Shown here: in pieces, positions 1 through 24,250 of the stretch
How the letters are laid out: every line of letters begins with the position of its first letter
Position numbering within the stretch: the first letter of the stretch is position 1
Virus record (IMG/VR): IMGVR_UViG_3300017917_000952
Location: 1-64,000 of that record
DNA: 64,000 nucleotides
Strand: one strand, 5' to 3'
The notes under the pieces: model-generated
What the model saw: only the letters and a program-made list of their open reading frames with translations
Databases searched by the model: none
What the model was told of the DNA's origin: nothing
Position numbers and translations under genes: made by a program

Positions 1-13
1 CCGACCATCCTGC

Positions 14-40
14 AATAGGCCCTTCGGGGCCTATTTTTTT
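14..40 (+). terminator. Rho-independent terminator
   Basis: AATAGGCCC-TTCG-GGGCCTATT stem with a C(UUCG)G tetraloop, followed by a T7 run. Confidence 0.9.
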
Positions 41-97
41 GGTTAAAATAATTTCAATAGTGCCATCTCCTTCTGTTTTCATGTGTTAAATATGCAC

Positions 98-1477
98 ATG
101 GCAAACTTAGGAAATTTAATCAAGCTCAATCGCAACCAATCGAAGGTCGCTATTATTGACGAAGATGCTCGCGTAACCTATAGACAATTGCATAATATGT
201 CTAACTATGCCGCATTTCATCTCAAATCAAAAGGTATTGCACCCGGTGACAGAGTAGCCATTAAAGGTGTTAATACCATAGGCTATGTAGCGGCATATTT
301 AGGAATTTTAAAACTAGGAGCCGTAGCGGTTCTCATAAATGTAAAACTTCCACAATCGCAGGTTGAGTTTATTTTAAAAGACAGCAATGTTAAATTTTTA
401 TGGGAAGATCCAAAAATCCCTAGCGATGTGTTTGTTGAATTTACTCCACACGAAGCTCAGGACAGTGACCCGGCTATTGTAATGTATACATCGGGTTCTA
501 CAAGCCAACCCAAAGGAGTCATTCTTCCGCATAGCCACAAATGGATTATTGAAAAGAAATCAAATTATCCGGCGGCTGTTCATAGGAGAGCGATTGTTGC
601 CGCACCATTATATCATATGAATGGCCTAAGCAATACCGAAACTACACTAAGCGGCCACGGTACTCTTATTCTTTTAAAAAGATTTGACCCGATACAATTC
701 TTAAAAAGAATAGCCTACCACCGAGTAAATTCTATTACATCTGTTCCTACGATGTTGGCATTGATACTTCAACATCAAGATGTAATGAAAAAATTAGATC
801 TAAAATGTGTTACACATATTGGAATGGCTTCTGCACCTGTTAGCAGACATTTATTTGAATCTCTAAAGGCTGCATTTCCAAAAGCAGTAATCAACAATGC
901 TTATGGAATAACTGAAGTTAGTCCGGGAATGTTTGGAAGGCATCCGACTCTACCCACGCCCGATATGAGTGTTGGATATCCAATACCTGGAATTGAATAT
1001 AGGCTAGTAGACGGAATTCTACAGGTAAAGAGTCCATCTATGTTCTTAAAATATAATAACCTAGCAACAAAAAACATAACCGAAGATGGGTTTTTTATCA
1101 CAAATGATTTGTTCAAAATAGACGAAAACGGGTTTTACTTTTTCTTAGGCCGCGCCGATGACATGTTTGTTAGCGGCGGGAATAATGTATACCCCCGTCA
1201 ATTAGAGTCAGTATTAGAAGAACACCCGTTAGTCAAACAAGCGGCAGTCATTGGCCTAGAAGATGATATTAAGGGGATGAAACCGTACGCATTTGTGGTA
1301 TCTACTGCCGGCGAGGACGAACTAAAAAGACATGTATTAGAATCGTTGCCGCCGAGTCATTGTCCTAGAAAAATTTGGTCGGTTATGACGATGCCACTAA
1401 CCAGCGTAAACAAAATAGATAAAAATGCACTAAAGAATCAAGCAAAAGAGTTATTAAATGTTGTTCAACAGAATTGA
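98..1477 (+). CDS. AMP-binding acyl-CoA synthetase (adenylate-forming enzyme)
   Basis: YTSGSTSQPKG AMP-binding loop, YGITE, FITNDL, GRADD and C-terminal NKIDK lysine. Start placed at ATG 98, 5 nt after TTAAATA (track start 83). Confidence 0.9.
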   Translation: MANLGNLIKLNRNQSKVAIIDEDARVTYRQLHNMSNYAAFHLKSKGIAPGDRVAIKGVNTIGYVAAYLGILKLGAVAVLINVKLPQSQVEFILKDSNVKFLWEDPKIPSDVFVEFTPHEAQDSDPAIVMYTSGSTSQPKGVILPHSHKWIIEKKSNYPAAVHRRAIVAAPLYHMNGLSNTETTLSGHGTLILLKRFDPIQFLKRIAYHRVNSITSVPTMLALILQHQDVMKKLDLKCVTHIGMASAPVSRHLFESLKAAFPKAVINNAYGITEVSPGMFGRHPTLPTPDMSVGYPIPGIEYRLVDGILQVKSPSMFLKYNNLATKNITEDGFFITNDLFKIDENGFYFFLGRADDMFVSGGNNVYPRQLESVLEEHPLVKQAAVIGLEDDIKGMKPYAFVVSTAGEDELKRHVLESLPPSHCPRKIWSVMTMPLTSVNKIDKNALKNQAKELLNVVQQN

Positions 1478-2195
1478 GAATCTTAACGGTCAGGTAGCCG
1501 TAATTACCGGAGCCAACGGCGGTGTCGGGTTTGCTGTTGCAGAAAGACTAGCAAAGTCGGGTGCTCAGATTATCGGAATAGTTAGACGCAACGTAGAAGA
1601 AATGCAGGCAAGGTTAGATCAACTAGGGCCAGGTCATAGAGCCCTATTAGCGGATGTAACTAGCAGCGAACAATTAATATCGGCGGCGGCCCAGATCACA
1701 CAGTGCGATATACTTATTAATAATGCCGGCGCTTCTACTCCTATCGATCATAAAAATTTAACCTCGCTGACGGACGAAATTTTTGAAAACGTAGTAAAGG
1801 TTAATCTAAACGGCGTATTTTACACTACTAAGGCATTTTTACCTCTCCTACGAAAGAGTCAGAATGCACTGGTTGTTAATATAAGTTCGGCTAGTAGTAT
1901 ACGAACAGGCGGCAGCAATGTTGCCTATGCAGCCGCAAAAGCAGGGGTTGACTCATTGACTAGAAATTTAGCAAAGGCCCTTGCTCCAATTAGAGTAGTA
2001 AGTTTAAATCCTACACTTATAAAAACTAATTTTACACAAATGCCAGACTCTTATTACCATAACGCAGGTCTAGGAACTCCATTAAAACGAGTAGTTACTG
2101 TAGAAGATGTTGCATCAACTGTAGAGGCACTGGCAACTACAGTGAGATTTGTAACCGGCAACAACATTGTCATTGACGGAGGAAGAACACTATGA
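1458..2195 (+). CDS. Short-chain dehydrogenase/reductase (SDR)
   Basis: TGANGGVG Rossmann motif, NNAG, catalytic S and YAAAK, IDGG C-terminus. Confidence 0.92.
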   Translation: MLFNRIENLNGQVAVITGANGGVGFAVAERLAKSGAQIIGIVRRNVEEMQARLDQLGPGHRALLADVTSSEQLISAAAQITQCDILINNAGASTPIDHKNLTSLTDEIFENVVKVNLNGVFYTTKAFLPLLRKSQNALVVNISSASSIRTGGSNVAYAAAKAGVDSLTRNLAKALAPIRVVSLNPTLIKTNFTQMPDSYYHNAGLGTPLKRVVTVEDVASTVEALATTVRFVTGNNIVIDGGRTL

Positions 2196-3064
2196 CTACA
2201 ATTATAACCTGTGCTATAACAGGAGCGGTCACTAGTAGAGATCAAACTCCGTATCTTCCAGTGACTCCTGAAGAGATTGCAATTAGCGCACTTGAAGCAG
2301 CAGAAGCCGGCGCGGCAGTAGCGCACATACATGTTCGAGATCCCGAAACAGGAAAACCGAGTATCAATGTAGAGTACTACAGAGATACAGTTGATAGAAT
2401 TCGTAAACAAAATAAAGACCTTTTGATTAACTTAACGACTGGGCCTGGCGCATTTTATTTGCCAAGTTTTGGTGTTAACCTAGCACAAGGTGCTCCAGGA
2501 ACTTTACTACTAGGCGCCGCAAAACGTGTAGAGCATATTCAGTTAATTAAACCCGATATCTGTAGTTTAGATTTTAATACCATGCATCAGGCCGGAGACG
2601 GTATCAGAATAAACCATAAACGTGTTACTAGAGAAATGCTAAGGTTAGTTCAAGAAGCAGGTACGAAACCAGAGTTAGAGATCTTTGATAGCGGAGACCT
2701 TCGCATAGCACAAGAGTTTGTTGCAGAAGGATTGGTAAAAGGTAAACCATTTTGGCAATTTGCCATGGGCGTTAAATATGGCTGGGGCGCAAGCACCAAT
2801 GCACTACAATATGCTTACAGAGAACTAACACCGGGATCGTTGTGGAGTGCCTTTGGCATAGGAAAAGAACAGATGCCATTTGTTGCACAGACAATGTTGT
2901 TAGGTGGGCATGTTAGGGTAGGCATGGAAGATAATATCTACACCAGTAAGGGAGTGTTAGCAAAAACTAATGCAGAATTGGTTAGTATGGCCGTTGACAT
3001 TATCAGACTATTAGGAGGCAAGGTTGCATCCTATCAAGAAGCAAGGGAAATTTTATTACAATGA
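2192..3064 (+). CDS. Beta-keto acid cleavage enzyme (BKACE/Kce, DUF849)
   Basis: ITCAITGA start, PVTPEEIA, AGAAVAHIHVRD zinc motif, PELEIFD, GGHVRVGMEDN. Confidence 0.9.
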   Translation: MTTIITCAITGAVTSRDQTPYLPVTPEEIAISALEAAEAGAAVAHIHVRDPETGKPSINVEYYRDTVDRIRKQNKDLLINLTTGPGAFYLPSFGVNLAQGAPGTLLLGAAKRVEHIQLIKPDICSLDFNTMHQAGDGIRINHKRVTREMLRLVQEAGTKPELEIFDSGDLRIAQEFVAEGLVKGKPFWQFAMGVKYGWGASTNALQYAYRELTPGSLWSAFGIGKEQMPFVAQTMLLGGHVRVGMEDNIYTSKGVLAKTNAELVSMAVDIIRLLGGKVASYQEAREILLQ

Positions 3065-3843
3065 CACAAGAAAGATTAGATACTAGACAGTCCTATTTCT
3101 ACAGGGATCATACCGGGATACGAAGAAGATACGGAATATACATGCCTGCTATTGATAGATTCCTGCATGTGTCAGAACAAGATTTATGGATGAGTCTCGA
3201 AACTGCTGAGATTCTAAGTTCCAAAGTACAAACTATGCTATATGTGCTGCCCCCTGGTTACATAAAAGTTCCCGAGTATACCGAACTTATTAATAATCAA
3301 AACTGTCTCAATTGGGGCATCTATGACAAGTCAAAATTAAAGATAGGTTCCGGCAGTGCGCTAGGTGCCAGACAGACTCCTATTATAGGTATGCTTTATC
3401 CTGATGATCGATTAGAAGAACATCAGTCTCTTCCAGAAGACTTTATCGAAGATAGTTCTATACTAATAGGTTTGAAAGACTATGCAGATTATGTATATCG
3501 AAGAGTTTTAGGAATTAGCATTGCAGTGAATTTTTATAATCCGTATTTCTCAAAGAAATTTATAGAAAAATATATCGACAATGATTGGGTAGAAAATAAA
3601 GAAAATTCAGCAGACCCTTCCTTTTCAAAAGGTATTGAATTTGAAATTAAGAAAATACTTTACCAGTGCAACTCTAAGGAAGAAGCCGAAGAAGCAATTA
3701 CTAATTTCTGGCTCGAAAATTATAGAAACGTAGGATTTATTATGGTAGGATATTATAAGGTAATCGGAGAAAGAATCCCAGAAAAACTAAGACCATACGC
3801 TTCAAATATTCACTATCTTAACCATTCAGTGTGGGTCATATAA
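3061..3843 (+). CDS. Hypothetical protein, coupled to the downstream PP-loop ATPase gene
   Basis: 260-aa ORF overlapping both neighbours; no motif recognised. Confidence 0.7.
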   Translation: MTQERLDTRQSYFYRDHTGIRRRYGIYMPAIDRFLHVSEQDLWMSLETAEILSSKVQTMLYVLPPGYIKVPEYTELINNQNCLNWGIYDKSKLKIGSGSALGARQTPIIGMLYPDDRLEEHQSLPEDFIEDSSILIGLKDYADYVYRRVLGISIAVNFYNPYFSKKFIEKYIDNDWVENKENSADPSFSKGIEFEIKKILYQCNSKEEAEEAITNFWLENYRNVGFIMVGYYKVIGERIPEKLRPYASNIHYLNHSVWVI

Positions 3844-5102
3844 TGCTTAATATAAACGATACACTTTATTTTTCAAGCCATGTTGTGAATTGGTATACTA
3901 GAGATACTTGGGATAAGGTATACAAAAACGTCCCTCCAGACGGTCAATGGTACCTAAAGGTGTACGAAAAGGTCTTACCTAATCGATTAATAACAAGGAA
4001 TGGGGAGTGGACTACTCCGTGGCCCCAGGAACTAATTCCTAAATTTAAGATGCCCGAGTACGATCCTTACTTTAGTAAATCGTTCGAACAGGTGACAGAT
4101 GAAAACGCTCTACGGATAAGGGATAGAATTCTCCAAGGAGAAAAGTTTGCCGTCATGTATTCGGGGGGTATTGATAGTACACTAGTTCTTTCATCGTTGA
4201 TTAAAAATCTTAGCAGTGAAGAATTAGAAAATGTAACTGTAGTTTGTAGTGGAGAAAGCATTGCCGAGAACCCTGTGTTCTATAGTAAGTTCATTCACGA
4301 AAAAATGAAAACCCTAGATTCTAAACGACACAAATATGATGACCTGATTAATCTAGGTTTGACTCCTATTATTTCAGATGAAGGAGATTGTATTTTTGGA
4401 ACACTTATCGGGCTCAATATGTACAACAGTTTTGATGCCTTAGTTGATCACGTATCGGGTCCCGTAAAAGAAAATCTAAGGCTTCTAAAAGATAAAATTA
4501 GCGATCCCAGTGTTCATTACAGTACATTTAAAGACCTAATTATTAAATTTTTGGATTTACCGCATTCACCGACATTTGGTAGAATTCTGTACGACAAATA
4601 TGATCATAATATAAGAACTGCAACAGTTCCTGTTCATAGTCTCCATGATTTTTTCTGGTGGTTAATTTTCAACGTTAAATATTACAATTGTTCCGTTAGG
4701 GGTGCAATATATATCAACGATACTATAGATATCAACACAGCCGTTCACAGAATCCATAATTGGTTTAATGATGAAGATTACCAACGATGGAGTATGGCAA
4801 ACAATAACAATGGAACAAAAATTAAAAAAAGTATCCTCAGTTATAAAACGGCGGCTAAAGAATATATCTACTCCGTTGATAACAATATTTGGTACAGAAC
4901 CTTTAAGACAAAATTAGAGTCCCTGTGGAATATAAGTAACTTGCAAAATGTACAGAATATTCCGATGGAAAAAAGGCCTGTAGCAAGGATAGCAGTTAAA
5001 AAAGAAAACTGGGAATTGGTGCATCTTACTGACCCGGGGGTGGTTGAGTATTTTACTCATCATGCATCAAATTATAAAATAGATTGGACAGACATCAAAT
5101 GA
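3831..5102 (+). CDS. PP-loop ATPase (asparagine synthase C-domain / adenine nucleotide alpha-hydrolase-like)
   Basis: MYSGGIDST PP-loop and SDEGDCIFG; no N-terminal glutaminase Cys. Confidence 0.7.
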   Translation: MGHIMLNINDTLYFSSHVVNWYTRDTWDKVYKNVPPDGQWYLKVYEKVLPNRLITRNGEWTTPWPQELIPKFKMPEYDPYFSKSFEQVTDENALRIRDRILQGEKFAVMYSGGIDSTLVLSSLIKNLSSEELENVTVVCSGESIAENPVFYSKFIHEKMKTLDSKRHKYDDLINLGLTPIISDEGDCIFGTLIGLNMYNSFDALVDHVSGPVKENLRLLKDKISDPSVHYSTFKDLIIKFLDLPHSPTFGRILYDKYDHNIRTATVPVHSLHDFFWWLIFNVKYYNCSVRGAIYINDTIDINTAVHRIHNWFNDEDYQRWSMANNNNGTKIKKSILSYKTAAKEYIYSVDNNIWYRTFKTKLESLWNISNLQNVQNIPMEKRPVARIAVKKENWELVHLTDPGVVEYFTHHASNYKIDWTDIK

Positions 5103-6004
5103 AAAAATTTTTAGCAACCTTATTATTAGCAACTACAGCATTTGTGGCACATGCTAAAGAAAATATTACAATTTTCTATGCATGGGGTCCAGGTGACTCT
5201 GTAGCAAACTATCATCGCACTATCGCTGCTGAAGCAAACAAAATTCAAGACAAATACAATTTTATCTTTGATACCAAGCCAGGCGCAGGTGGTGCAATCG
5301 CATCTAACCACGTACTTAATACTCCTAACAGTGTATTGGCACATAGCACAGCATTTTTTGTGCGTCCTGTAGTGTTCCCTAACGAAAGTTATGATTTAAC
5401 AAAATACAAAGAACAATATGTTCACTGCATGGCCCCAATGGCTGTGACTAGTACAAAGTATAAAACTGTAAAAGATGTACCTGCCAACGCTAGTGTAGGT
5501 ATTAGCGGCCTAGGTGTTACTACACACTTAGCAGCACTAGAACTAAAGAAACGTTATCCGGATTTAAATATCGTTCCTTTTAAATCTACCAACGATAGTA
5601 TGTTAAGTATGGTAAGCGGTCAAACTGATCTACATATTGGATTTATCAGCGAAGCAGAACAATGGAGTAAAGAAAACTCTAACAGTGATCGTAAGGTAAA
5701 TGTTTTAGGTATTACTGGATCAAAAGTTGTTAATGGTTACCAACCGTTGGTTCGTCAAGGCTTCGACGCTAGTTTTGCCGACATGAATGTTGGACATCAT
5801 CTCCTAGTACCAACAACAGTCAGCGAAGAAAAGCGCAAAGAGTTTCACGCCATTTTTGCTCGTGCAGCCCAGGCTCCTAGCGTTCGTGCTGCCTATGCAG
5901 TTGACTACTGCGAACCACAGGCTGTTACCTATGACGGTTTAGACAAGTTCTTCTTGTTCCATACAAACTATTGGAAGAAGTTAGCATCTGCGGTTAAACT
6001 ATGA
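5084..6004 (+). CDS. Bug/TctC-like tripartite tricarboxylate transporter substrate-binding protein
   Basis: Signal peptide (MKKFLATLLLATTAFVAHA, likely start about 5099), KPGAGGAIA, GVTTHL, VPFKS. Confidence 0.8.
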   Translation: MDRHQMKKFLATLLLATTAFVAHAKENITIFYAWGPGDSVANYHRTIAAEANKIQDKYNFIFDTKPGAGGAIASNHVLNTPNSVLAHSTAFFVRPVVFPNESYDLTKYKEQYVHCMAPMAVTSTKYKTVKDVPANASVGISGLGVTTHLAALELKKRYPDLNIVPFKSTNDSMLSMVSGQTDLHIGFISEAEQWSKENSNSDRKVNVLGITGSKVVNGYQPLVRQGFDASFADMNVGHHLLVPTTVSEEKRKEFHAIFARAAQAPSVRAAYAVDYCEPQAVTYDGLDKFFLFHTNYWKKLASAVKL

Positions 6005-6894
6005 TTAAGAAATTAATTATTGGAGTTCTAGGGGCATTGGCTATTTCGGCCAATGCTGCCGAAACTATTAAGGTATACAGTCCTTACAGTGCGAGCCACA
6101 GCGGTACTCCTGCATTGTTACGAGTGTTAGACCAAGCAAACGCAAATCAAAATATCTATAAATTCGTTCCAGAATTTAAACCGGGCGGAAATCAGATCAT
6201 CGCTGTAAAAAGTGTAGATGCAAATAGCCTGGCAATTATTGCACCTGCGTTTGTTGAGAATGTAGAATCGGGTAAACTTAATGAGTCTGACTATGTTCCA
6301 GTTTATGCACTCGGTGATGCCTGCTGGGCTGTGATCACAAACGGACCTTTAGAAGGTGCTAAGGAAGTTACAGTCGGCGGGGTTGGATTTGGCAATGCTG
6401 CACACTTAACAGCACTAGCATTAGGCGAGAAGTTTAAGTTTAACGTTCGTTATATTGTTTTTAGATCTAACAACGATGCACTGGTTAACATGACTGGAAA
6501 CAACGGTGTAGAATTTGTTGTTGAAAAATACGAAAGTTACGAAGGATTAAAAACTAAAAATCCTAATCTAAGAGTTATTGCTGCTAGTTGTCCTAAGAGA
6601 TTACCCCAGGCACCAAAAGTAAAAACACTCAAGGAAATGGGAATAGAAGCACCCTATGTCTTCAACATCATTGTATCTAACAGAGAAATGCCCAGTGGTC
6701 GTAGGTTAGCAATTTCAAAAATCTTAAATGACGCTACTCTAGCACTAGGCGAAGAAGAAATTTTTAAAATCTCTGCAATGCGTCCTCCTGTGTTCGATGG
6801 TGTCACTGCTGAAGATTTTTATGTAAAATCTACAGATCTTGTCAAAAATCTTCAGAAAAAGTATAGGTCTAAGATTGAAGAATCCAAAAAGTAA
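6001..6894 (+). CDS. Bug/TctC-like substrate-binding protein (divergent)
   Basis: Signal peptide ...AISANA, KPGG, GFGNAAHL, KRLPQAPKVKTLKEMG. Confidence 0.75.
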   Translation: MIKKLIIGVLGALAISANAAETIKVYSPYSASHSGTPALLRVLDQANANQNIYKFVPEFKPGGNQIIAVKSVDANSLAIIAPAFVENVESGKLNESDYVPVYALGDACWAVITNGPLEGAKEVTVGGVGFGNAAHLTALALGEKFKFNVRYIVFRSNNDALVNMTGNNGVEFVVEKYESYEGLKTKNPNLRVIAASCPKRLPQAPKVKTLKEMGIEAPYVFNIIVSNREMPSGRRLAISKILNDATLALGEEEIFKISAMRPPVFDGVTAEDFYVKSTDLVKNLQKKYRSKIEESKK

Positions 6895-6931
6895 CTAAAT
6901 ATATGAGCATGAAAGGTTCATGCTCATTTTT
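6895..6931 (+). terminator. Terminator hairpin directly downstream of a late-promoter-like CTAAATA
   Basis: ATGAGCATGAA-AGG-TTCATGCTCAT (6903-6927) plus T run; CTAAATA at 6895-6901. Confidence 0.75.
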
Positions 6932-6956
6932 AACGTTATAAAATGGAGCCTAAACA

Positions 6957-7904
6957 ATGACAAAAAAGCACGTAAAATGGGTTATCGCCCATGAGCCTAT
7001 TGGATTATTCCTAAAGGTAGCAGAGCGTTTTGCTAAGGAAGTAAACGAGCAGACCAACGGTATGTTCGATATCGAAGTTCTTTCTCTAAGCGATTATTCT
7101 GCAAAGTACAATGATGGTAAGAAAATTACCAAAGACGACCTAATGAAGTTAGTAGATACTGGCGCAATCGAAATGAGCCACATCTACACAACATGGTTAG
7201 CAGACTACAACAAAGATCTACACGCATTAGATCTACCTTTCTTATTCCGTGATCACGCACACGCTGACGCAGTTCTAGAAGGCGAAATCGGTGCAGAGCT
7301 TCTAGCAGGTGTTTCTAAGAACAGCAACATCAAGGCTATGAGTTTCACATATAGCGGTGGCTATCGTGTTGTTCCTGCAAACTTTGCAGCAGACACAGTA
7401 GAAGCATGGCAAGGTAAGAAAGTTCGTACCAGCCGTAGCCCAGTTGCAGTCGACACATTCAAACTGCTAGGCGCACAACCTTTTGAAGGTATTGCTTTAG
7501 AAGAAATGAATCAGGCTGCTGACCAAGGTATTATTGAAGCAGGCGAGAGCACATACGTTCGCGTATTCCCTCTAGACCAGCATAAGAGCTTCGAAGTTGT
7601 TAACGACACAGCACACAGCCTATTCTTAACAAGCATTATTGTTAACCAAGATTTCATGGCTCAGTTCAGCCAAGAAGTTCAAGAAGTTCTTGCAACAGCC
7701 GCATTCAATGCAGCACGTCAAGAGCGTCGCGAAAGTGTTGCTAACATTCCTGAAATCCTAGAACTTTGCGAAAAAGAAGGTGTTCAGGTTGTTAAGATGA
7801 GCGCAGAAGAAGAGTGCAAGTTCAAGGCAATCACAAGTCAGGTTTATGACATGTATGCCGACTATTTCACTCCCGGCTTAGTCCAGAAGATTCAGTTACA
7901 GTAA
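6957..7904 (+). CDS. dctP: TRAP transporter DctP-family substrate-binding protein lacking a signal peptide
   Basis: FAKEVNEQTNG, ALDLPFLFRD, GKKVRT with the conserved Arg, GIIEAGE; GGAG RBS at 6945-6948. Confidence 0.85.
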   Translation: MTKKHVKWVIAHEPIGLFLKVAERFAKEVNEQTNGMFDIEVLSLSDYSAKYNDGKKITKDDLMKLVDTGAIEMSHIYTTWLADYNKDLHALDLPFLFRDHAHADAVLEGEIGAELLAGVSKNSNIKAMSFTYSGGYRVVPANFAADTVEAWQGKKVRTSRSPVAVDTFKLLGAQPFEGIALEEMNQAADQGIIEAGESTYVRVFPLDQHKSFEVVNDTAHSLFLTSIIVNQDFMAQFSQEVQEVLATAAFNAARQERRESVANIPEILELCEKEGVQVVKMSAEEECKFKAITSQVYDMYADYFTPGLVQKIQLQ

Positions 7905-7921
7905 TCTGTACTTAATCAAGT

Positions 7922-7942
7922 AAAGGGCCATATGGCCCTTTT
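7922..7942 (+). terminator. Terminator / perfect 20-bp palindrome
   Basis: AAAGGGCCAT|ATGGCCCTTT just after the dctP stop. Confidence 0.8.
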
Positions 7943-7957
7943 CTTACGAGTATACCC

Positions 7958-7965
7958 TATAAATA
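7958..7965 (+). promoter_or_regulatory. T4-type late promoter TATAAATA
   Basis: Exact T4 late consensus, 4 nt before ATG 7970. Confidence 0.65.
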
Positions 7966-7969
7966 ATTC

Positions 7970-8569
7970 ATGTGGATGCCTGTTGATTTTAAAGAAATTG
8001 GAAAAATAGATCCGGAAATATTAAATCCGGTTATAGAACTATTTGATACAATAAACTGGAATGATTTTTCATACAGACGTCCAGAACCTAAACTGCGTGC
8101 CGGAAAATTACTGGCTTTGCCTTACCTGTTATACAAATATGATCATCCTGTTTATACCGAAGAGCAGCAGATGATAATTAAGGCCGTGGAACCAGTAGTA
8201 GATGAGATTATTAAACTATTCCCCGGTTATGTAAAAGTTCGCGGAGAAATTGCAACATTATTACCGGGGGTTGAATTACCTTTACATACTGATATTGTTT
8301 GGTTTCATAAGTATTGTAGGCGAATACACATTCCTATAATAACTAACAAGGACTGTTACCAACAATTTGAAAATAGAACTTCTCATTTAGAGTTTGCAAA
8401 AATATACGAGATTAATAATAGAATAATGCACGGTGCTGGTAATCTCGGAAACAGCCAACGCATACACTTAATCCTTGACTTGCTCAGTGACAACATCTAT
8501 AATATAATTGATAAAAAAGTATATCAACTTATGACGGCGCTGCCAAAAAATGAAGTCAAAATTTATTAA
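7970..8569 (+). CDS. Aspartyl/asparaginyl beta-hydroxylase-like 2OG-Fe(II) oxygenase
   Basis: LPLHTD (HxD), RRIHIPIITN, EINNRIMHGAGN, RIHLILD. Confidence 0.8.
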   Translation: MWMPVDFKEIGKIDPEILNPVIELFDTINWNDFSYRRPEPKLRAGKLLALPYLLYKYDHPVYTEEQQMIIKAVEPVVDEIIKLFPGYVKVRGEIATLLPGVELPLHTDIVWFHKYCRRIHIPIITNKDCYQQFENRTSHLEFAKIYEINNRIMHGAGNLGNSQRIHLILDLLSDNIYNIIDKKVYQLMTALPKNEVKIY

Positions 8570-9098
8570 CGCATATATGAATGTGGCAAAAGAGTTTGCC
8601 AATCTAAGCCATGCACGACGATTACACGTCGGTGCTATTGTAGTCAAAGACGACCGTATCATCAGCATCGGCTACAACGGTATGCCTGCCGGTTGGGATA
8701 ACGACTGTGAATACAAAGATTACTGCCTAAGCAAAGATCTCAATGGAAATTATTTTCCAGGGGCGGAAGAAGAATATCCGTTTGTAGAAGAAGAACACGG
8801 TCCATATTACGAGTATACTCGTCGGTACCGTCTTAAAACCAGACCAGAGGTATTACATGCAGAATCAAACGCTATTGCAAAACTGGCGAAGTCTAATGAC
8901 AGTGGTGATGGGGCTGACTTATTTGTTACTCACAGTCCTTGTATCGAGTGTGCCAAACTCATTTATCAGTCAGGCATTCGTCGTGTTTATTTTGGTGAAC
9001 ACTATCGCGACGATGCTGGGATTGAATTCCTCAAGAAGTCGGGCGTGGAGGTAGTACAACCCCAACTAGGTGAATCCGAGGAACCTCAGAGCAATTAA
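8550..9098 (+). CDS. dCMP deaminase
   Basis: VGAIVVKD, GYNG, HAESNAI and SPCIECAK zinc motifs. Confidence 0.93.
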   Translation: MKSKFINAYMNVAKEFANLSHARRLHVGAIVVKDDRIISIGYNGMPAGWDNDCEYKDYCLSKDLNGNYFPGAEEEYPFVEEEHGPYYEYTRRYRLKTRPEVLHAESNAIAKLAKSNDSGDGADLFVTHSPCIECAKLIYQSGIRRVYFGEHYRDDAGIEFLKKSGVEVVQPQLGESEEPQSN

Positions 9099-9609: not shown

Positions 9610-10536
9610 ATGAACTTAAAACCCCTAGTTGCAGCACTAGTTACTGCATTTACACTTCAAGTCGGCATTGCTAATGCAGAATTTAATCCTGTAGGTAAAC
9701 AGGTTAATGTTATCATTCCGTTTGCGCCAGGCGGCGGAGTAGATCAGACATTTAGACATCTTCAGACTTATGCTTCAAAGAAAGGCGTTAATCTTGTCGC
9801 AATTTATAAACCGGGTGCAGAAGGGCTGATCGCAATGAGCGAATTAGTTACCAAACCTGCAGACGGAATGACCGTTAGTGTTACTACAGCAGGCGTTATT
9901 GCCAATTACCGATTAAAGAATCCGTCTACAGATGTAGTTGCTATCTCTGGTATTCGAGACAGTATCATGGCCTTGGTTGTTAGTAATAAGAGCCAAATTG
10001 AAAGTCTAGACCAATTAGACAAAGATCTTAAAGAAGGTAAAAAACTAAATGTAGGATATGGTGCACCAGGGCAGCAGATGTTCTTAGAGCAGTTCTTTGA
10101 ATTAGCAAAGGCAAAGAAAGGCGTTGCCATGGTTCCTTATAAGGGCGGCGGGCCGGTTGTTACTGACCTACTAGGCGGGCATATTGATGTTGCAGCAGTA
10201 CCGTTATCAATTGTTAAGGCACATATCGATTCTGGAAAAGTAAAATTAGTAGGATTAGCCAGCAGAGCAAAGATAGAAGGTTATGATTCTACTCCGCTAA
10301 TGAAGGCCAAGTATCCAAAATGGGAAGAGTTTGATAACTTTGCAGTTGTTGCCGAAAAAGGCACAGACAAAGAAGCCATTAATTGGTGGTCTAATTTCTT
10401 AAAAGATTATATCAATGACGAATCTGTTAAGAAGGATTTTGTCAAAGACATGACTGTACCTGTCGAGTTTGGTGCAACTAACCTAGAAAAAACAATTCAG
10501 TCTAGCATGAATAGACTTAAAAAGAATGGAAATTAA
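9610..10536 (+). CDS. Bug/TctC substrate-binding protein
   Basis: Signal peptide, IIPFAPGGGVD, KPGAEG, VPYKGGGPVVTDLLGGHID. Confidence 0.9.
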   Translation: MNLKPLVAALVTAFTLQVGIANAEFNPVGKQVNVIIPFAPGGGVDQTFRHLQTYASKKGVNLVAIYKPGAEGLIAMSELVTKPADGMTVSVTTAGVIANYRLKNPSTDVVAISGIRDSIMALVVSNKSQIESLDQLDKDLKEGKKLNVGYGAPGQQMFLEQFFELAKAKKGVAMVPYKGGGPVVTDLLGGHIDVAAVPLSIVKAHIDSGKVKLVGLASRAKIEGYDSTPLMKAKYPKWEEFDNFAVVAEKGTDKEAINWWSNFLKDYINDESVKKDFVKDMTVPVEFGATNLEKTIQSSMNRLKKNGN

Positions 10537-11290
10537 AAAATTTACAGACCGTGTAAAGTACAAGAGTTTACCCCCGGACTTTAATCATCAAAACGGGGTA
10601 AACTTTCAAAGTTCTTACGAATACACAAAAACATTCAGTAACTATCATTTTAACAAATGGGTTGTTGAAGGCGACGGCGACTGGTATCATTCATTAGGCC
10701 GATTTGAAGGCGACTGGACTGCCGACGTTGAAAAAATTATTGAAAAGAGTAAAGAACTAAGTTGGGATCAAAGCACTAAGTCAGGACTTCGACCGGGATT
10801 CAAAGGCGGACAGAGTCCCATGAAAGCGCAGGAAGAATACGATCGCGCCCAACACGGACTTGATAAGGTAGATCAAACTAATTTAGTTCTTGAGGATTTT
10901 TTAGATCAATTTCCTACTATCAAGAAAATGATAGATTACTGGGAACTAGAAAAGGTAAGTTATCGGGCACACGTTCAATGGCCTGGACAATGCTTCGGTG
11001 TTCATATTGACAAATTGTGGCATAGGTGTCCGGAAGATCCTAGCCGTATTGTAAGACTTATTCTTAATCTAGCAGACTATGAACCTGGTCAGGTAATTCT
11101 TTACGGTAACAGTGTGCTAACGCAATGGCATGCCGGAGACATTCATATTTTTGATACACTAAACGTTCCTCACGGTACATTTAATCTAAGCACTAGTCCA
11201 CGACCTAATATTACAATAACTGGTCTTAGAACTGAGGCCACTGACCGTAAATTAGCAGCAGCAAACAAAGATTCAAGATATCAAATATGA
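10526..11290 (+). CDS. 2OG-Fe(II) oxygenase / cupin-like protein
   Basis: HVQWPGQCFGVHID (HxD), QWHAGD, NVPHGTFN, ITITG. Confidence 0.6.
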   Translation: MEIKKFTDRVKYKSLPPDFNHQNGVNFQSSYEYTKTFSNYHFNKWVVEGDGDWYHSLGRFEGDWTADVEKIIEKSKELSWDQSTKSGLRPGFKGGQSPMKAQEEYDRAQHGLDKVDQTNLVLEDFLDQFPTIKKMIDYWELEKVSYRAHVQWPGQCFGVHIDKLWHRCPEDPSRIVRLILNLADYEPGQVILYGNSVLTQWHAGDIHIFDTLNVPHGTFNLSTSPRPNITITGLRTEATDRKLAAANKDSRYQI

Positions 11291-11859
11291 CTCCCTACGA
11301 GCCCTTGAATATATGGTTGCCCGAAGATCTTCCTCTATATCAAAAATATAAAGATCTAAAATATAGACAGGTAGATACTGGAGCATATGAAATAGATAAA
11401 ACTTTTGAACGGGCAGGCCTTTCTATGAAAGAGTTTGAATCTGTTCCTGCCTTACTTGATCTTATAAAAAAATATAAGATGTTGTCAAAAGTGTTTATGC
11501 TATTGCCTAACACCACGTATAATTGGCATGTTGACGCATTTAGGTACGTAGCATTTAATTGTCTACTTACTACAGACGACTCTAACTATCTTACTTTGTT
11601 TTGCGATGAATTAGAAAAATATAATCTTGTATACTTCAAAACTAAAAGATTAGTATATGAACCAAGAAGATTTTATTTGTTTAACACACAGGTTCCTCAC
11701 ATAATAACAAATTATAGCGACAAACCTAGATATCTAATTTCTATTGCACCCTACTTTGCAGAAAAAATTTCTAATGAAAACATTAAAGCCACTGATAGAA
11801 ATTTTTCTACATATCTTAAAATTGTCGAAGAATTAAAACTACAAGGCCTGATAAATTAA
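11287..11859 (+). CDS. 2OG-Fe(II) oxygenase-like protein
   Basis: YNWHVD (HxD), LFNTQVPH distal His, RYLIS. Confidence 0.6.
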   Translation: MTPYEPLNIWLPEDLPLYQKYKDLKYRQVDTGAYEIDKTFERAGLSMKEFESVPALLDLIKKYKMLSKVFMLLPNTTYNWHVDAFRYVAFNCLLTTDDSNYLTLFCDELEKYNLVYFKTKRLVYEPRRFYLFNTQVPHIITNYSDKPRYLISIAPYFAEKISNENIKATDRNFSTYLKIVEELKLQGLIN

Positions 11860-11862
11860 ATT

Positions 11863-13293
11863 ATGCAGATTGTAATTTTAACCGGCGGAACTGATAACCG
11901 AAGATTTCTAAGGTACTTAGGTCCTTATCAAATAGCATGGTGGATGCGTGAACATGGATATTCTGTTCAGGTACTAGATTTTTTATTTTTTCTTCCTAAG
12001 GTGGAGAGAATAAATCTCCTAAGAAAATTTATAACAAAAGAAACAAAAGTAGTTTCAGTTGCCCCCTTTGCATACTTGGACTGGCATCACGACAGTGCTC
12101 TGGCTCCTATTATAAGTTTATTCCAAGACATAAAATACGAATTTCCTTGGGTCAAAATATCTGTAGGCGGGCAGTTTGCTACTAATTTTTTAAAGAAAAA
12201 AGTTTATACAAGACTAAAGTATAAGGTTGATGCAGTATTCCAAGGACCAGGAGAACATTCTTATCTAGACTATTGTAACTACATTTTTGGAAAGTCAGAT
12301 AAACACCCGGCATTCAAACTTATAGATGACCATAAAGTATTCGAATCCTCAGTAGAGTATGATGTACAAAACTGTAGAATGAGATTTTCTACTCAAGATT
12401 TTATTCTACCCGGAGAAGCATTACCAATCGAATTAAGTCGTGGATGTATTTTCAAATGTGCATTCTGTCAGTATCCTAACTTAGGCAAAGACAAAGACGA
12501 CTTCAACAGGAAGATTGAGAATATCCGAGATACCATGATTCATAATTATGAAAATTTCGGGACCACAGAATATTACATAGCAGACGATACAATTAACTCA
12601 CATAGGCAACGGACTAAAGATCTGCACGAAATGTCTAAAACATTACCTTTCAAATTAAATTACATAGGGTATGTAAGATTAGACCTGTTAGACATTTGGC
12701 CCGAGCAGCAAGAGATATTGCCAGAGTCGGGACTGGTTAGTTGCCACTTTGGAATAGAATCACTAGATCCTTACTCTTGCAAACAGATAGGCAAAGGTTG
12801 GGGAGCGAAGAATCACAAAATATGGATTCCTAAGATCGCAGAAATGTGGAAAGATACTGTGTCAATAAGATGTTCATTAATTGCAGGCCTTGGGAAAGAA
12901 ACAGAAAAAGACTGGAATGAAACAATGGAGTGGTTTAAAACTACCGGTGTAAAAGATTGGTTCTATAACCTACTGGTCCTAAGGAAAGAAATTGACCTAA
13001 GTCTTTTTGAAAAGAATCCCGAAAAGTACGGTTACAAATTTGATAGCAAAGGTAATTGGTATACAGATACAATGACCTATTATAGAGCAAAGGAATGGCA
13101 AACACTTAACTACTATAGTAATCTGTCTTTAAGATATGCTACCACATGGGATTACATAGGACTAAGAAACTTAGGATTCAGCAAAGAACAACTTAATACT
13201 GAAAAGTTTGGGTCCATGATTAAAGCCGTTGCAGCAAGAACTCAAGCCCGAGACTTTGCTAAACGTTACTACCAACTGGCAATGAGTTATTAA
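11863..13293 (+). CDS. B12-binding radical SAM protein
   Basis: SRGCIFKCAFC CxxxCxxC motif, N-terminal cobalamin-binding-like domain (ISVGG), DDT, GIES, LIAGL. Confidence 0.85.
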   Translation: MQIVILTGGTDNRRFLRYLGPYQIAWWMREHGYSVQVLDFLFFLPKVERINLLRKFITKETKVVSVAPFAYLDWHHDSALAPIISLFQDIKYEFPWVKISVGGQFATNFLKKKVYTRLKYKVDAVFQGPGEHSYLDYCNYIFGKSDKHPAFKLIDDHKVFESSVEYDVQNCRMRFSTQDFILPGEALPIELSRGCIFKCAFCQYPNLGKDKDDFNRKIENIRDTMIHNYENFGTTEYYIADDTINSHRQRTKDLHEMSKTLPFKLNYIGYVRLDLLDIWPEQQEILPESGLVSCHFGIESLDPYSCKQIGKGWGAKNHKIWIPKIAEMWKDTVSIRCSLIAGLGKETEKDWNETMEWFKTTGVKDWFYNLLVLRKEIDLSLFEKNPEKYGYKFDSKGNWYTDTMTYYRAKEWQTLNYYSNLSLRYATTWDYIGLRNLGFSKEQLNTEKFGSMIKAVAARTQARDFAKRYYQLAMSY

Positions 13294-18800: not shown

Positions 18801-19028
18801 ATGATTTTCACAGAACATAAAAGCCAAGTACACTCAATTCGTCAAGACGATCCAGAGTTTAAGATCGTAGACGGCTTTGCCGTACACCCCCGAGCAATGG
18901 TACATATTTTACCAGAATGTCCCTGGGAACTTAGAGACCAAATTAATTTTGCCATTGCCAAGGGCTATCTAAAATTGGTCGCCAACATTACGGAGCGTGA
19001 ACGTATTTTTATGGGCCTGACAAAATGA
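18801..19028 (+). CDS. Hypothetical protein
   Basis: 75-aa ORF directly after the promoter, ATGA-coupled to the next gene. Confidence 0.65.
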   Translation: MIFTEHKSQVHSIRQDDPEFKIVDGFAVHPRAMVHILPECPWELRDQINFAIAKGYLKLVANITERERIFMGLTK

Positions 19029-19879
19029 TATTAAATATGCCAGGGACAGCCGGAAGTGCAAAGATTACTATGAGACCACTATTAACAGAAAAAAAATTAG
19101 GCATTATTGGATTAGGATTCGTCGGAGGTGCAATTAAAGCATCACTTGACTGGGGTGACGAAATTTGGGTTGTTATTGATCCTGCTAAAGGATTTAATGC
19201 AACCTATCAAGAACTAGCAGAAAAAACAGACGGCGTGTTTGTCTGTGTGCCTACTCCTATGGGAGATGACGGCGTCTGCGATACCAGTTATTTAGAAGAT
19301 GTTCTTAAAAATCTAAAGTCTGTGAACTATGAAGGCGTTATTATCAGCAAATGTACAGCACCTCCTTCTGTTTACGAACGGTTAAACAAGGATCATCCCA
19401 ACCTTGTACATGCACCAGAATTTTTAACTGCCGCAAACGCAAACAGAGACTACGTTAATGGGCAATTTGCAATCATTGGCGGTCGAGTGAATGCCTACAT
19501 CCGAGAAGCAGAACGCATTATTAAAATTACTCAAACTAATTTAAAAGATGTTATGCACTGCACCATTGGCGAAGCCGCATTAGCAAAATATACTATCAAT
19601 AGTTTCCTGGCTACCAAAGTTGCGTTTATGAACGAAGTTTATGAAATTGCACAGGCAGCAAACATGGACTATGATAAGATCGCGCATATGGTAACTTTAG
19701 ATCCTCGCATTGGACGCACCCACATGCAGGTCCCAGGACCCGACGGGCAGTTTGGGTTTGGCGGGGCCTGTTTTCCTAAGGATACCAGTGCATTGCTGAA
19801 ATATGCAGAAAGTCTAAACCAAACACCTATGGTATTAGATGCCGCTGTGAAAAAGAATACCCTACTACGCTTAAAGTGA
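19025..19879 (+). CDS. UDP-glucose/GDP-mannose dehydrogenase family protein (short form)
   Basis: GLGFVG, VCVPTP, PEFL, AKYTINSFLATKVAFMNE, GFGGACFPKD; lacks the C-terminal UDP-binding domain. Confidence 0.88.
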   Translation: MILNMPGTAGSAKITMRPLLTEKKLGIIGLGFVGGAIKASLDWGDEIWVVIDPAKGFNATYQELAEKTDGVFVCVPTPMGDDGVCDTSYLEDVLKNLKSVNYEGVIISKCTAPPSVYERLNKDHPNLVHAPEFLTAANANRDYVNGQFAIIGGRVNAYIREAERIIKITQTNLKDVMHCTIGEAALAKYTINSFLATKVAFMNEVYEIAQAANMDYDKIAHMVTLDPRIGRTHMQVPGPDGQFGFGGACFPKDTSALLKYAESLNQTPMVLDAAVKKNTLLRLK

Positions 19880-19884
19880 GAAAT

Positions 19885-20145
19885 ATGGAAAAAGAAATCC
19901 TTGATGAAGTTATTCGTTTAGTTGGAAAGATTAAAAAAGATCTTCCAAAAGAAAAAATTGTACCAACTGCTGAATTTGTTAAAGATTTAGAATTTGACAG
20001 TCTGGATATTACAGAACTTGTTATCGATCTTGAAGACGAGTTTCATTTCGACTTAGCAGAAAAGAACGCTAAGGGCGTGGTTACAATTCAAGATTTGGTT
20101 AATACAATTCTAAAATTAGTTGACAAATCTAAAGTTAGTAACTAA
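19885..20145 (+). CDS. acpP: Acyl carrier protein
   Basis: DLEFDSLDITELVIDLEDEF with the phosphopantetheine Ser, and TIQDLV. Confidence 0.88.
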   Translation: MEKEILDEVIRLVGKIKKDLPKEKIVPTAEFVKDLEFDSLDITELVIDLEDEFHFDLAEKNAKGVVTIQDLVNTILKLVDKSKVSN

Positions 20146-20148
20146 AAT
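20120..20148 (+). promoter_or_regulatory. Sigma70-like promoter for folE-guaC
   Basis: TTGACA-17-TAAAAT. Confidence 0.7.
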
Positions 20149-20190
20149 TATTACGGCAATCCTCTGCCTTAACATCGGAGAACAAAAATA

Positions 20191-21953: not shown

Positions 21954-21968
21954 TGGCAAAATCAACTA

Positions 21969-21997
21969 TTGACTTTTTCCATTTACTACATTACAAT
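21969..21997 (+). promoter_or_regulatory. Sigma70-like promoter
   Basis: TTGACT-17-TACAAT upstream of 22015. Confidence 0.6.
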
Positions 21998-22014
21998 AAA
22001 CTATAAGGTAACTC

Positions 22015-22734: not shown

Positions 22735-22749
22735 AAAGAAAGGCAACCT

Positions 22750-22923: not shown

Positions 22924-22926
22924 TCT

Positions 22927-24249: not shown

Positions 24250-24250
24250 C

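What the first reader, a model, noticed from the sequence alone, without database searches (positions are those of the whole stretch)
98..3064. Acyl-CoA ligase, SDR and BKACE operon in a phage
Seen: three overlapping genes directly behind a UUCG terminator and a TTAAATA box. Known: BKACEs cleave beta-keto acids using acetyl-CoA, and in bacteria they cluster with a dehydrogenase that makes the beta-keto acid. Inference: this is a complete mini-pathway (hydroxy acid to keto acid to acyl-CoA plus acetoacetate) carried by a virus, probably captured from a host catabolic operon together with a Bug protein.
Basis: partly seen in the sequence, partly recalled or inferred. Interest (0 to 1): 0.6.

Follow-up and report, generated by a model that had tools for sequence, protein, structure and literature searches.

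The report
Phage ligase, reductase, BKACE module
An uncultured freshwater giant T4-like phage carries an intact, conserved three-enzyme module (acid-activating ligase, NADP-type reductase, zinc BKACE-fold enzyme) inside a seven-gene operon with secreted acid-binding proteins; the module is real and widespread in uncultured phages, but which acid it handles, and whether it burns or builds it, is still open.

Summary
Three overlapping genes (ANL ligase 98-1477, classical SDR 1458-2195, DUF849/BKACE 2192-3064) follow a UUCG-loop terminator. The contig is a T4-like jumbo phage with gp23 capsid, gp20 portal and terminase.

The trio is the conserved core of a module found in at least 11 distinct phage or metagenome contexts, once as a ligase-SDR fusion. 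All catalytic motifs are kept and dN/dS is at most 0.07. Here it heads a seven-gene unit (plus o4, an AsnB-like amide synthetase and two secreted Bug-like proteins), closed by a second terminator.

- **Enzyme type:** the BKACE is not a canonical one. The Tyr next to the catalytic Glu is Phe in all 131 viral-clade relatives.
- **Nearest structure:** this is BsfD, a DUF849 enzyme that acetylates and decarboxylates rather than cleaves.
- **Cofactor:** the SDR carries an NADP(H)-type motif.
- **Origin:** the viral clade is old. It is 54-59% identical to a Comamonadaceae SDR-BKACE pair, so this is not a recent capture. The ligase is absent from those bacterial operons, and the Bug proteins show no co-capture.

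No cultured phage (50,697 records) has this enzyme. The substrate and direction remain untested.

The parts
14..40 (+). Intrinsic terminator upstream of the operon: 9-bp stem, UUCG loop, T-run
   Evidence: dG -15.4 kcal/mol, z -2.55; the same type occurs after gp23 and before the terminase gene
86..92 (+). TTAAATA heptamer, present but with no evidence of promoter function
   Evidence: 3 of 18 copies lie near gene starts, against 17 of 25 for ATAAATA
98..1477 (+). ANL-superfamily adenylate-forming ligase, 459 aa (alternative ATG at 92)
   Evidence: Pfam AMP-binding and AMP-binding_C. No NCBIfam equivalog reached. Best PDB match is MenE, E 1e-43. Motifs A3, A5, A8 and the A10 Lys are conserved in 14 homologs; A7 reads TND rather than TGD
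1458..2195 (+). Classical SDR, FabG-like, with NADP(H)-type Arg-Arg after beta2
   Evidence: Pfam. TGxxxGxG, NNAG and the N-S-Y-K tetrad are conserved in viral and bacterial partner SDRs. dN/dS 0.073
2192..3064 (+). DUF849/BKACE-fold Zn enzyme of the BsfD/3C6C-like subgroup (Phe165, beta3-loop insertion, no Arg at position 88, clade-specific Arg139)
   Evidence: dN/dS 0.034
3061..3843 (+). o4, a 260-aa protein of unknown fold that accompanies o5
   Evidence: No Pfam, NCBIfam or Atlas hit. AF2 pLDDT 53. Homologs sit beside o5 in L005, L006, L018, L019, L098, L101 and L109
3843..5102 (+). o5, a PP-loop (SGGIDS) AsnB-synthetase-domain-like enzyme without a glutaminase domain
   Evidence: AF2 pLDDT 82.8. 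VIA Z 12.7 to TsnB9, 11.1 to ASNS, 10.5 to beta-lactam synthetase, 9.9 to carbapenam synthetase. Atlas family is 94% viral. Family members lie in 11 of 13 contexts
5099..6004 (+). o6, a divergent Bug-like binding protein with a signal peptide
   Evidence: N-terminus; paralog of the next gene, E 8e-10
6001..6894 (+). TctC/Bug-family binding protein with a signal peptide; last gene of the unit
   Evidence: PF03401 E 2.2e-6, 27.8 bits against a cut-off of 27; N-terminus
6903..6932 (+). Hairpin plus T-run that closes the seven-gene unit
6957..7904 (+). DctP (TRAP) family binding protein without a signal peptide; a frequent partner of the viral-clade BKACE
   Evidence: PF03480 E 5e-40. There is no room for a signal peptide in 8 contexts
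7970..8569 (+). Asp/Asn beta-hydroxylase-like oxygenase (context)
   Evidence: PF05118 E 6e-8
9610..10536 (+). Third Bug/TctC binding protein with a signal peptide (context)
   Evidence: PF03401 E 1.2e-21; N-terminus

Best explanation
A functional auxiliary metabolic module of uncultured freshwater T4-like jumbo phages that takes up and converts a carboxylic acid during infection. Shown: the genes, their conservation and their intact motifs. Inferred, step 1: the secreted Bug-like proteins hand an organic acid to the host's tripartite transporter. Inferred, step 2: in the cytoplasm the SDR interconverts the 3-hydroxy and 3-oxo forms of an uncharged or hydrophobic acid. Inferred, step 3: the Zn DUF849 enzyme uses acetyl-CoA for Claisen-type chemistry on the 3-oxo acid. 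The most likely outcome is acyl-CoA plus acetoacetate. Inferred, step 4: the ligase supplies or recycles a CoA thioester, for example by activating acetoacetate or the acid itself, feeding host central metabolism. The o5 amide synthetase, o4 and the cytoplasmic DctP-like protein are accessory. The substrate is unknown.
For: All three enzymes keep their catalytic residues across 14 to 131 relatives: Zn ligands H45, H47 and E246, catalytic E163, R242 and D247; the SDR tetrad; ligase motifs A3, A5, A8 and A10. Purifying selection is strong, with dN/dS 0.03-0.07 and dS saturated. The ligase-SDR-BKACE order recurs in G001 (345 kb, also gp23-positive), L006, L101 (374 kb), L107 (360 kb), L108 (a T4-like contig with gp32 and gp59, trio only), L002 and L017. 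In L007-9 the ligase and SDR are fused into one 721-aa protein. Signal-peptide Bug proteins are co-transcribed. The sister bacterial clade has SDR directly upstream in 72 of 78 loci, and in Limnohabitans it lies between an intradiol dioxygenase, an MDR reductase, a Bug protein and a FAD monooxygenase, which is a catabolic cluster. There is genetic precedent for SDR plus BKACE as a catabolic pair in deoxyribonate breakdown (PMC6365646). The pocket positions read Val13 (Glu14 in Kce) and Phe88, which points to an uncharged side chain.
Against: Phe165 replaces the Tyr found in the characterised cleaving BKACEs. The nearest characterised homolog, BsfD, acetylates and decarboxylates instead of cleaving. 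The SDR motif is NADP(H)-type. A plain catabolic scheme does not need an AsnB-like amide synthetase or o4. The ligase resembles MenE and fatty-acyl ligases rather than acetoacetyl-CoA synthetases. No thiolase lies on the 207 kb held. The trio occurs without binding proteins in L108, L107 and G001. No RNA data exist.
Confidence: 0.45

Rival explanations
1. Biosynthetic module. The DUF849 enzyme works like BsfD (3-oxo acid plus acetyl-CoA gives a beta-diketone plus CO2) or in the condensing direction. The NADPH-type SDR then reduces the keto group. The ANL enzyme and the AsnB-like o5 adenylate a carboxylate to form an ester, lactone or amide. The phage would thus make a small molecule, such as an antimetabolite, a signal or a modified building block, rather than burn one. 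This is functionally analogous to OleA/OleD/OleC beta-lactone chemistry (own knowledge, not tested here).
For: The best PDB match is BsfD (E 1.1e-80), ahead of 3C6C and well ahead of Kce (E 8e-42). The protein shares Phe for Tyr and the roughly 20-residue beta3-loop insertion. Published groups G6 and G7 of the family are 'not BKACE', and G6 has decarboxylation activity (PMC4922564). The SDR motif is NADP(H)-type. The ligase-SDR fusion suits consecutive steps. o5 resembles hydroxyamidotransferase, beta-lactam synthetase and carbapenam synthetase. Tailoring-type neighbours are present: AspH-like oxygenases, radical SAM, carbamoyltransferase, GNAT and recurrent FA_desaturase.
Against: BsfD's Arg91 is absent (F, L, Y, V, Q, H or T in 131 sequences). 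The role of Tyr in cleavage is unproven. Phe also occurs in unrelated Variovorax paralogs. There is no exporter. Co-transcribed import-type binding proteins fit uptake better. No PepM or other known cluster signature was found.
Confidence: 0.3
2. Deoxyribonate salvage. As in Pseudomonas simiae, the SDR would oxidise 2-deoxyribonate and the BKACE would cleave the keto acid to glyceryl-CoA plus acetoacetate, letting the phage burn sugar from degraded host DNA.
For: This is the only genetically proven SDR plus BKACE operon pair (PMC6365646). A K. michiganensis variant of that pathway uses a CoA synthetase.
Against: The pocket is hydrophobic (Val13, Phe88, Trp198) rather than polyol-binding. No lactonase, glycerate kinase or MFS transporter is nearby. 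T4-like phages recycle deoxynucleotides rather than burn them (own knowledge). Similarity to the P. simiae proteins could not be measured here.
Confidence: 0.05
3. Not a phage function: the region is host DNA at a contig end, an assembly chimera, or a decaying passenger.
For: The operon sits at the very start of a linear, 58%-complete contig. Loose ends map to the terminator hairpin in other samples.
Against: GC is uniform. The same operon lies internally in 345-374 kb phage contigs and between gp59 and gp32 in L108. Near-identical DNA occurs in at least 5 studies without joints inside 1-6000. dN/dS is at most 0.07.
Confidence: 0.03

Closest known systems
BsfD, the DUF849 enzyme of flavophos biosynthesis in Burkholderia (PDB 9ZSC/9ZSH/9ZSN/9ZSV; PMC12871164)
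   Same: It is the best solved-structure match (E 1.1e-80, near-gapless over 286 residues). The Zn ligands are the same, Phe replaces the canonical Tyr, and the same long loop follows beta3.
   Different: Arg91, which contacts the phosphonate, is Phe88 here and is never Arg in the viral clade. There is no PepM or phosphonate context. The viral clade has its own invariant Arg139, Gln189 and Trp198.
Canonical BKACEs: Kce (2Y7F) and BKACE15/PdKce (8RIP)
   Same: Pfam family, TIM-barrel Zn site, catalytic Glu (E171 in BKACE15, E163 here), Arg and Asp.
   Different: Tyr145/Tyr173 is Phe165 here. A loop insertion of about 16-20 residues is present. NCBIfam equivalog cut-offs are not reached (238 against 382, 204 against 430, 171 against 350).
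Comamonadaceae SDR-BKACE pair (Variovorax, Limnohabitans, Polaromonas)
   Same: It is the sister clade in the rooted tree. SDR lies directly upstream in 72 of 78 loci, Phe165 is shared, and a Bug gene is often about 1.5 kb downstream.
   Different: Identity is 54-59% for BKACE and 41-49% for the SDR. These operons have no ligase, o4, o5 or DctP-like gene. Position 88 is Arg (the GPGGRF motif, as in BsfD). The Limnohabitans locus examined (L072) lies in an aromatic-degradation neighbourhood.
Deoxyribonate dehydrogenase plus ketodeoxyribonate cleavage enzyme (P. simiae PS417_07245/07250; PMC6365646)
   Same: An SDR and a BKACE encoded side by side, acting in sequence on a 3-hydroxy acid.
   Different: That operon carries a lactonase and MFS transporters, and has no ligase. 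Sequence relatedness was not measurable here, and the pocket residues do not suggest a polyol acid.
Asparagine synthetase B-like amide and lactam synthetases (TsnB9, beta-lactam synthetase, CarA), compared with o5
   Same: PP-loop SGGxDS motif and synthetase-domain fold, Z 9.9-12.7.
   Different: There is no N-terminal glutaminase domain, identity is about 10%, and the family is virus-dominated.

Membership tests
BKACE / DUF849 (Pfam PF05853) | Profile match above the gathering score | tested here: met
   316.7 bits against 24.8, E 1.7e-94
Canonical cleaving BKACE (Kce, BKACE15) | Zn ligands His-x-His plus Glu | tested here: met
   H45, H47 and E246 are invariant in 131 viral-clade and 78 bacterial sequences; they align to BsfD H48, H50 and E247
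Canonical cleaving BKACE (Kce, BKACE15) | Catalytic base Glu (E171 in BKACE15) and the conserved Arg and Asp | tested here: met
   E163, R242 and D247 are invariant
Canonical cleaving BKACE (Kce, BKACE15) | Tyr two residues after the catalytic Glu (Y145 in Kce, Y173 in PdKce) | tested here: not met
   Phe165 in all 209 sequences of the viral and Comamonadaceae clades; Tyr in 2Y7D, 3LOT, 8RIO and Variovorax paralogs L111 and L113
Canonical cleaving BKACE (Kce, BKACE15) | Membership of a curated equivalog (Kce, 3,5-dioxohexanoate, 3-oxoadipate enzymes) | tested here: not met
   All scores fall below the NCBIfam cut-offs
Canonical cleaving BKACE (Kce, BKACE15) | 3-oxo acid plus acetyl-CoA gives acyl-CoA plus acetoacetate | not testable with these tools
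   Needs an enzyme assay
BsfD-type DUF849 | Phe in place of the Tyr | tested here: met
   F165 aligns with BsfD F166
BsfD-type DUF849 | Insertion of about 20 residues after beta3 | tested here: met
   No gap against BsfD or 3C6C; a gap against Kce and canonical paralogs
BsfD-type DUF849 | Arg91 near the phosphonate, and a PepM gene-cluster context | tested here: not met
   Position 88 is Phe and is never Arg in 131 viral-clade sequences. No PepM among the operon neighbours
Classical SDR | TGxxxGxG, NNAG and the N-S-Y-K tetrad | tested here: met
   All are present and conserved in 12 viral or MAG SDRs and 79 bacterial partner SDRs
Classical SDR, NADP(H)-preferring type | Basic residues, and no Asp, after beta2 | tested here: met
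   VRR, VRK or TRK in viral SDRs and HRK in bacterial partners. The cofactor rule comes from established SDR classification (own knowledge); the cofactor itself was not assayed
ANL adenylate-forming enzymes | Pfam domains plus motifs A3, A5, A8 and the A10 Lys | tested here: met
   A7 reads TND rather than TGD
Acyl-CoA ligase (CoA as the acceptor) | Thioester formation with CoA | not testable with these tools
   No NCBIfam equivalog is reached. The best is the long-chain fatty-acid ligase subfamily at 279 against 476 bits
AsnB-like amide synthetase (o5) | PP-loop SGGxDS and the synthetase-domain fold | tested here: met
   S107 to S112 invariant; Z 9.9-12.7
AsnB-like amide synthetase (o5) | N-terminal Ntn glutaminase domain | tested here: not met
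   The matched chain ranges of the top four AsnB-type hits (TsnB9, ASNS, beta-lactam and carbapenam synthetase) start at residues 135-178 of the targets. The protein is 419 aa
TRAP DctP periplasmic binding protein | Signal peptide | tested here: not met
   A stop codon lies just upstream of the Met in 8 contexts; the Variovorax homologs have signal peptides
Phage auxiliary metabolic gene | Lies on a contig with phage hallmark genes, and recurs in phage genomes | tested here: met
   gp23, gp20 and terminase on the same contig; G001 and L108

The most novel reading that the evidence does not exclude
The phage makes a small molecule. A virus-specific DUF849 clade (Phe165, Arg139, hydrophobic position 88) would perform BsfD-like acetylation and decarboxylation, or condensation. 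Together with an NADPH reductase, an ANL adenylating enzyme and AsnB-like amide synthetases, it would build a beta-diketone, beta-hydroxy acid, lactone or amide product that acts on the host or on competitors. This would be a phage-borne biosynthetic pathway rather than a catabolic AMG.
Probability: 0.22. Interest if true: 0.85.

Novelty: new variant of a known kind. Interest (0 to 1): 0.55.

Why it matters
BKACE/DUF849 enzymes were not found in phage papers: no paper in the library pairs DUF849 with 'viral', and the one that holds both BKACE and 'phage' is a study of bacterial phosphonate biosynthesis whose passages were not read. None of 50,697 deposited phage genomes encodes one. Yet more than 120 sequence clusters of a virus-associated clade exist in metagenomes, on contigs of up to 374 kb. 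The module is a ready-made test case in two ways. First, a natural Tyr-to-Phe DUF849 clade can settle what that residue does, cleavage or decarboxylation. Second, it is a rare phage operon that couples secreted binding proteins to cytoplasmic enzymes. That arrangement would show phages re-wiring which organic acids an infected freshwater bacterium takes up.

Tried and rejected
- **Cultured phages:** there was no DNA match for 1-9000 and no protein match for the BKACE or o5. Ligase hits were at most 31% identical, in unannotated records whose viral origin was not checked.
- **o4:** Pfam, NCBIfam, Atlas and a per-member Pfam scan gave nothing. The AF2 model had pLDDT 53 and was unusable, so no fold search was run.
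- **o5:** Foldseek against the PDB gave only weak rows with E at least 0.01. VIA-align was needed.
- **Published ASMC groups G1-G7:** exact placement was not possible. The logos and per-protein mapping are not in the held texts, so only the residue-level comparison is given.
- **Binding-protein ligands:** PDB matches are too distant to name a ligand.
- **TTAAATA as a promoter:** rejected on genome-wide counts.
- **Thiolase:** none was found on the contig.
- **tRNAs:** none in the window.
- **RNA evidence:** no RNA run holds the stretch.
Full report
**1. What is there**

The window is the first 64 kb of a 206,751-bp linear IMG/VR virus record that CheckV rates 58% complete. Three + strand ORFs sit at its left end:
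- 98-1477: AMP-binding plus AMP-binding_C, E 2.8e-59.
- 1458-2195: adh_short, E 1.9e-41.
- 2192-3064: PF05853 BKACE, E 1.7e-94.

The ORFs overlap by 20, 4 and 4 nt. Upstream, 14-35 folds into a 9-bp stem with a UUCG loop followed by a T-run, with dG -15.4 kcal/mol. The same terminator type follows gp23 and precedes the terminase gene.

TTAAATA is at 86-92 but looks like chance. Only 3 of 18 + strand copies lie within 40 nt of a gene start. For ATAAATA, the T4 late-promoter core, the figure is 17 of 25.

**2. It is a phage, and the unit is longer than three genes**

The contig encodes T4-type gp23 (E 5.6e-81), gp20 portal (E 8e-113) and a terminase. The window itself holds tail-fibre genes. The capsid protein is 68-72% identical to those of 310-470 kb phages of Vibrio, Sinorhizobium, Escherichia and Salmonella, which fits a genome of about 350 kb.

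Translational coupling continues past 3064:
- o4, 3061-3843.
- o5, 3843-5102.
- A Bug-like protein, 5099-6004.
- A TctC-family protein, 6001-6894.

A hairpin with a T-run at 6903-6932 then closes the unit. Both binding proteins carry signal peptides and are paralogs. A DctP-family gene without a signal peptide follows (6957-7904). Beyond it lie AspH-like oxygenases, a dCMP deaminase, a third Bug protein, a radical SAM enzyme and a carbamoyltransferase.

**3. Conservation**

A pattern scan of IMG/VR found 16 loci. A word search found more than 120 clusters at 67-93% identity, all of them metagenomic, on contigs of up to 374 kb.

The ligase-SDR-BKACE order recurs in these contexts:
- G001, 345 kb, 94% complete and gp23-positive.
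- L006, L002 and L017.
- L101, on a 374-kb contig, with two small ORFs inserted.
- L107, on a 360-kb contig, with one small ORF inserted.
- L108, where the trio sits among gp59, gp32 and baseplate genes, preceded by an o5-like gene and with no o4 or binding-protein genes.

In L007-9 the ligase and SDR are one 721-aa polypeptide carrying AMP-binding, AMP-binding_C and adh_short domains, followed by the BKACE.

An HMM of the o5 family finds members in 11 of 13 distinct contexts. o4 is found in 7, and the leaderless DctP-like gene in 7.

Against a 93%-identical relative (L098), dN/dS is 0.03-0.07 for the six genes whose dS could be estimated. For the ligase and o5, dS was saturated and no ratio could be computed. 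Near-identical DNA occurs in pond, freshwater, estuary and wastewater metagenomes from at least 5 studies, with no joints inside 1-6000.

**4. Are the enzymes intact?**

- **BKACE:** H45, H47 and E246 (Zn ligands), E161, E163, R242 and D247 are invariant in 131 viral-clade and 78 bacterial sequences. E163 aligns with E171 of BKACE15, the catalytic base shown by mutagenesis (PMC11961710).
- **SDR:** TGxxxGxG, NNAG and the N-S-Y-K tetrad are all conserved.
- **Ligase:** motifs A3, A5, A8 and the A10 Lys are conserved, with a clade-specific TND in place of TGD in A7.

**5. Why it is not a plain BKACE**

The best solved-structure match is BsfD (9ZSC, E 1.1e-80), followed by 3C6C (E 3.5e-72). Kce scores only E 8e-42.

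BsfD is the DUF849 enzyme of flavophos biosynthesis. It acetylates a 3-oxo acid with acetyl-CoA and then decarboxylates it to a beta-diketone, instead of doing the retro-Claisen cleavage. Its authors point to Phe166 replacing the Tyr of cleaving BKACEs, and to a roughly 20-residue insertion after beta3 that carries Arg91 (PMC12871164).

The phage enzyme has Phe165 at that position and has the insertion. Arg91, however, corresponds to Phe88. In the viral clade this position is L, F, Y, V, Q, H or T and never Arg, while all 78 Comamonadaceae homologs have Arg.

The viral clade has its own invariant Arg139, Gln189 and Trp198, and Val13 where Kce has the amine-binding Glu14. NCBIfam equivalog cut-offs are not reached.

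The published family survey has two groups that are 'not BKACE', one of them with decarboxylation activity (PMC4922564). I could not map this sequence onto those groups. Phe also occurs in two more distant Variovorax paralogs, so it is a subfamily trait rather than proof of BsfD chemistry.

**6. Other parts**

The SDR has Arg-Arg after beta2 and no Asp there. This is the NADP(H)-type signature by established SDR classification (own knowledge), and the bacterial partner SDRs share it.

o5 has an invariant SGGIDS PP-loop and a confident AF2 model with pLDDT 82.8. Its best structural matches are the hydroxyamidotransferase TsnB9 (Z 12.7), asparagine synthetase (11.1), beta-lactam synthetase (10.5) and carbapenam synthetase (9.9). 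There is no glutaminase domain. Its family is 94% viral in the Atlas. o4 remains unidentified.

**7. Origin**

The nearest genomes are Comamonadaceae at 54-59% identity. SDR lies directly upstream in 72 of 78 loci, often with a Bug gene downstream, but there is no ligase, o4, o5 or DctP-like gene. In Limnohabitans the pair lies between an intradiol dioxygenase, an MDR reductase, a Bug protein and a FAD monooxygenase.

I rooted a tree with canonical Variovorax paralogs. All viral and metagenome sequences form one clade (SH-aLRT 96). Two MAG loci, L018 and L019, sit at its base, and the Comamonadaceae set lies next to it.

L018 lies on a 504-kb contig beside Lon protease and a regulator, and it holds the ligase, SDR, BKACE, o4, o5 and the leaderless DctP-like gene. 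A cellular version of the whole module therefore exists.

This fits one old acquisition followed by long residence in phages. It does not fit a recent capture from a host operon, and nothing shows that a Bug gene travelled along.

**8. Most likely mechanism and its rival**

I put 0.45 on an uptake-and-conversion module. The steps are:
1. Secreted Bug proteins deliver an organic acid.
2. The SDR interconverts its 3-hydroxy and 3-oxo forms.
3. The DUF849 enzyme uses acetyl-CoA on the 3-oxo acid.
4. The ligase makes or recycles a thioester.

The genes, motifs and conservation are shown. Every chemical step is inferred.

I put 0.30 on a biosynthetic reading, with BsfD-like or condensing chemistry, NADPH reduction, and adenylation and amidation by the ligase and o5. 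The Phe165, the NADP motif, the ligase-SDR fusion and the amide-synthetase partner favour it. The co-transcribed import proteins and the catabolic setting of the sister clade count against it.

Deoxyribonate salvage (0.05) and an artefact or passenger (0.03) are minor options.

**9. Novelty**

No deposited phage genome has this enzyme or o5. No paper in the library links DUF849 to viruses. The one paper that holds both BKACE and 'phage' is a study of bacterial phosphonate biosynthesis, and I did not read its passages.

It is a new, virus-associated variant of a known enzyme family, set in a new conserved module. It is not a new kind of system.

Noticed in passing
window 6957-7904; also L005, L006, L018, L019, L109, L010-L014: The DctP (TRAP) family binding protein lacks a signal peptide in every viral-clade context, with a stop codon just upstream of the Met. 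Variovorax homologs have one. It would be a cytoplasmic 'periplasmic binding protein', and it is a frequent neighbour of the viral BKACE.
   Followed up: partly
L010 8916-9884, L012 2694-3665, L014 8906-9884 (- strand): In this lineage the DctP-like gene is cut into two in-frame halves by TAA-TAA-ATG at about residue 160. The cut is conserved in the three contigs examined.
   Followed up: partly
L007 5833-7998 (identical length in L008 and L009): A natural fusion of the ligase and the SDR in one 721-aa ORF, directly followed by the BKACE.
   Followed up: yes
window 55025-55780; L018 16257-16850; L019 4340-5155; L107 3325-4044; L109 13327-14118: A fatty-acid-desaturase-family (PF00487) gene recurs close to the module in four other contexts and is present 50 kb away in this phage. 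It hints at a hydrophobic substrate.
   Followed up: partly
L101 8085-9264; L107 7699-8268; G000 195457-196059 (-): A family of unknown proteins of about 190 aa is inserted between the ligase and the SDR in two other jumbo-phage contigs. This phage has a homolog far from the operon.
   Followed up: partly
window 19025-35966: A dense arm of metabolic genes: a UDP-glucose dehydrogenase that appears split into two ORFs (19025-19879 and 19876-20145), GTP cyclohydrolase I, a GMP reductase/IMPDH-like gene, a Bax1-I membrane protein, a DAO-type FAD oxidoreductase and a nucleotide-sugar epimerase.
   Followed up: no
window 7970-8569, 10526-11290, 11287-11859, 11863-13293: One AspH-like oxygenase (7970-8569, PF05118), two ORFs without a Pfam match whose His-x-Asp-type motifs look oxygenase-like by eye (10526-11290 and 11287-11859), and a radical SAM enzyme sit just downstream of the operon. 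In the 93% relative L098, a second radical SAM gene lies divergently upstream of the ligase, where this contig ends.
   Followed up: partly
G000 genome-wide: ATAAATA lies within 40 nt upstream of + strand gene starts in 17 of 25 copies, consistent with a T4-type late promoter. UUCG-loop terminators sit at 14-35, about 139.86 kb (after gp23) and about 173.96 kb.
   Followed up: partly
L072 4136-13020 (Limnohabitans MAG): The bacterial sister SDR-BKACE pair (Phe-type, with the GPGGRF motif as in BsfD) lies within 4 kb of an EamA transporter gene and beside an intradiol dioxygenase, an MDR reductase, a Bug protein and a FAD monooxygenase. This bacterial cluster also looks uncharacterised.
   Followed up: partly
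window 1-200 in run X5: Depth is about ten times higher over the terminator hairpin, and loose ends sit at 14/15 and 45/47. The hairpin sequence is therefore shared with other DNA in those samples.
   Followed up: no
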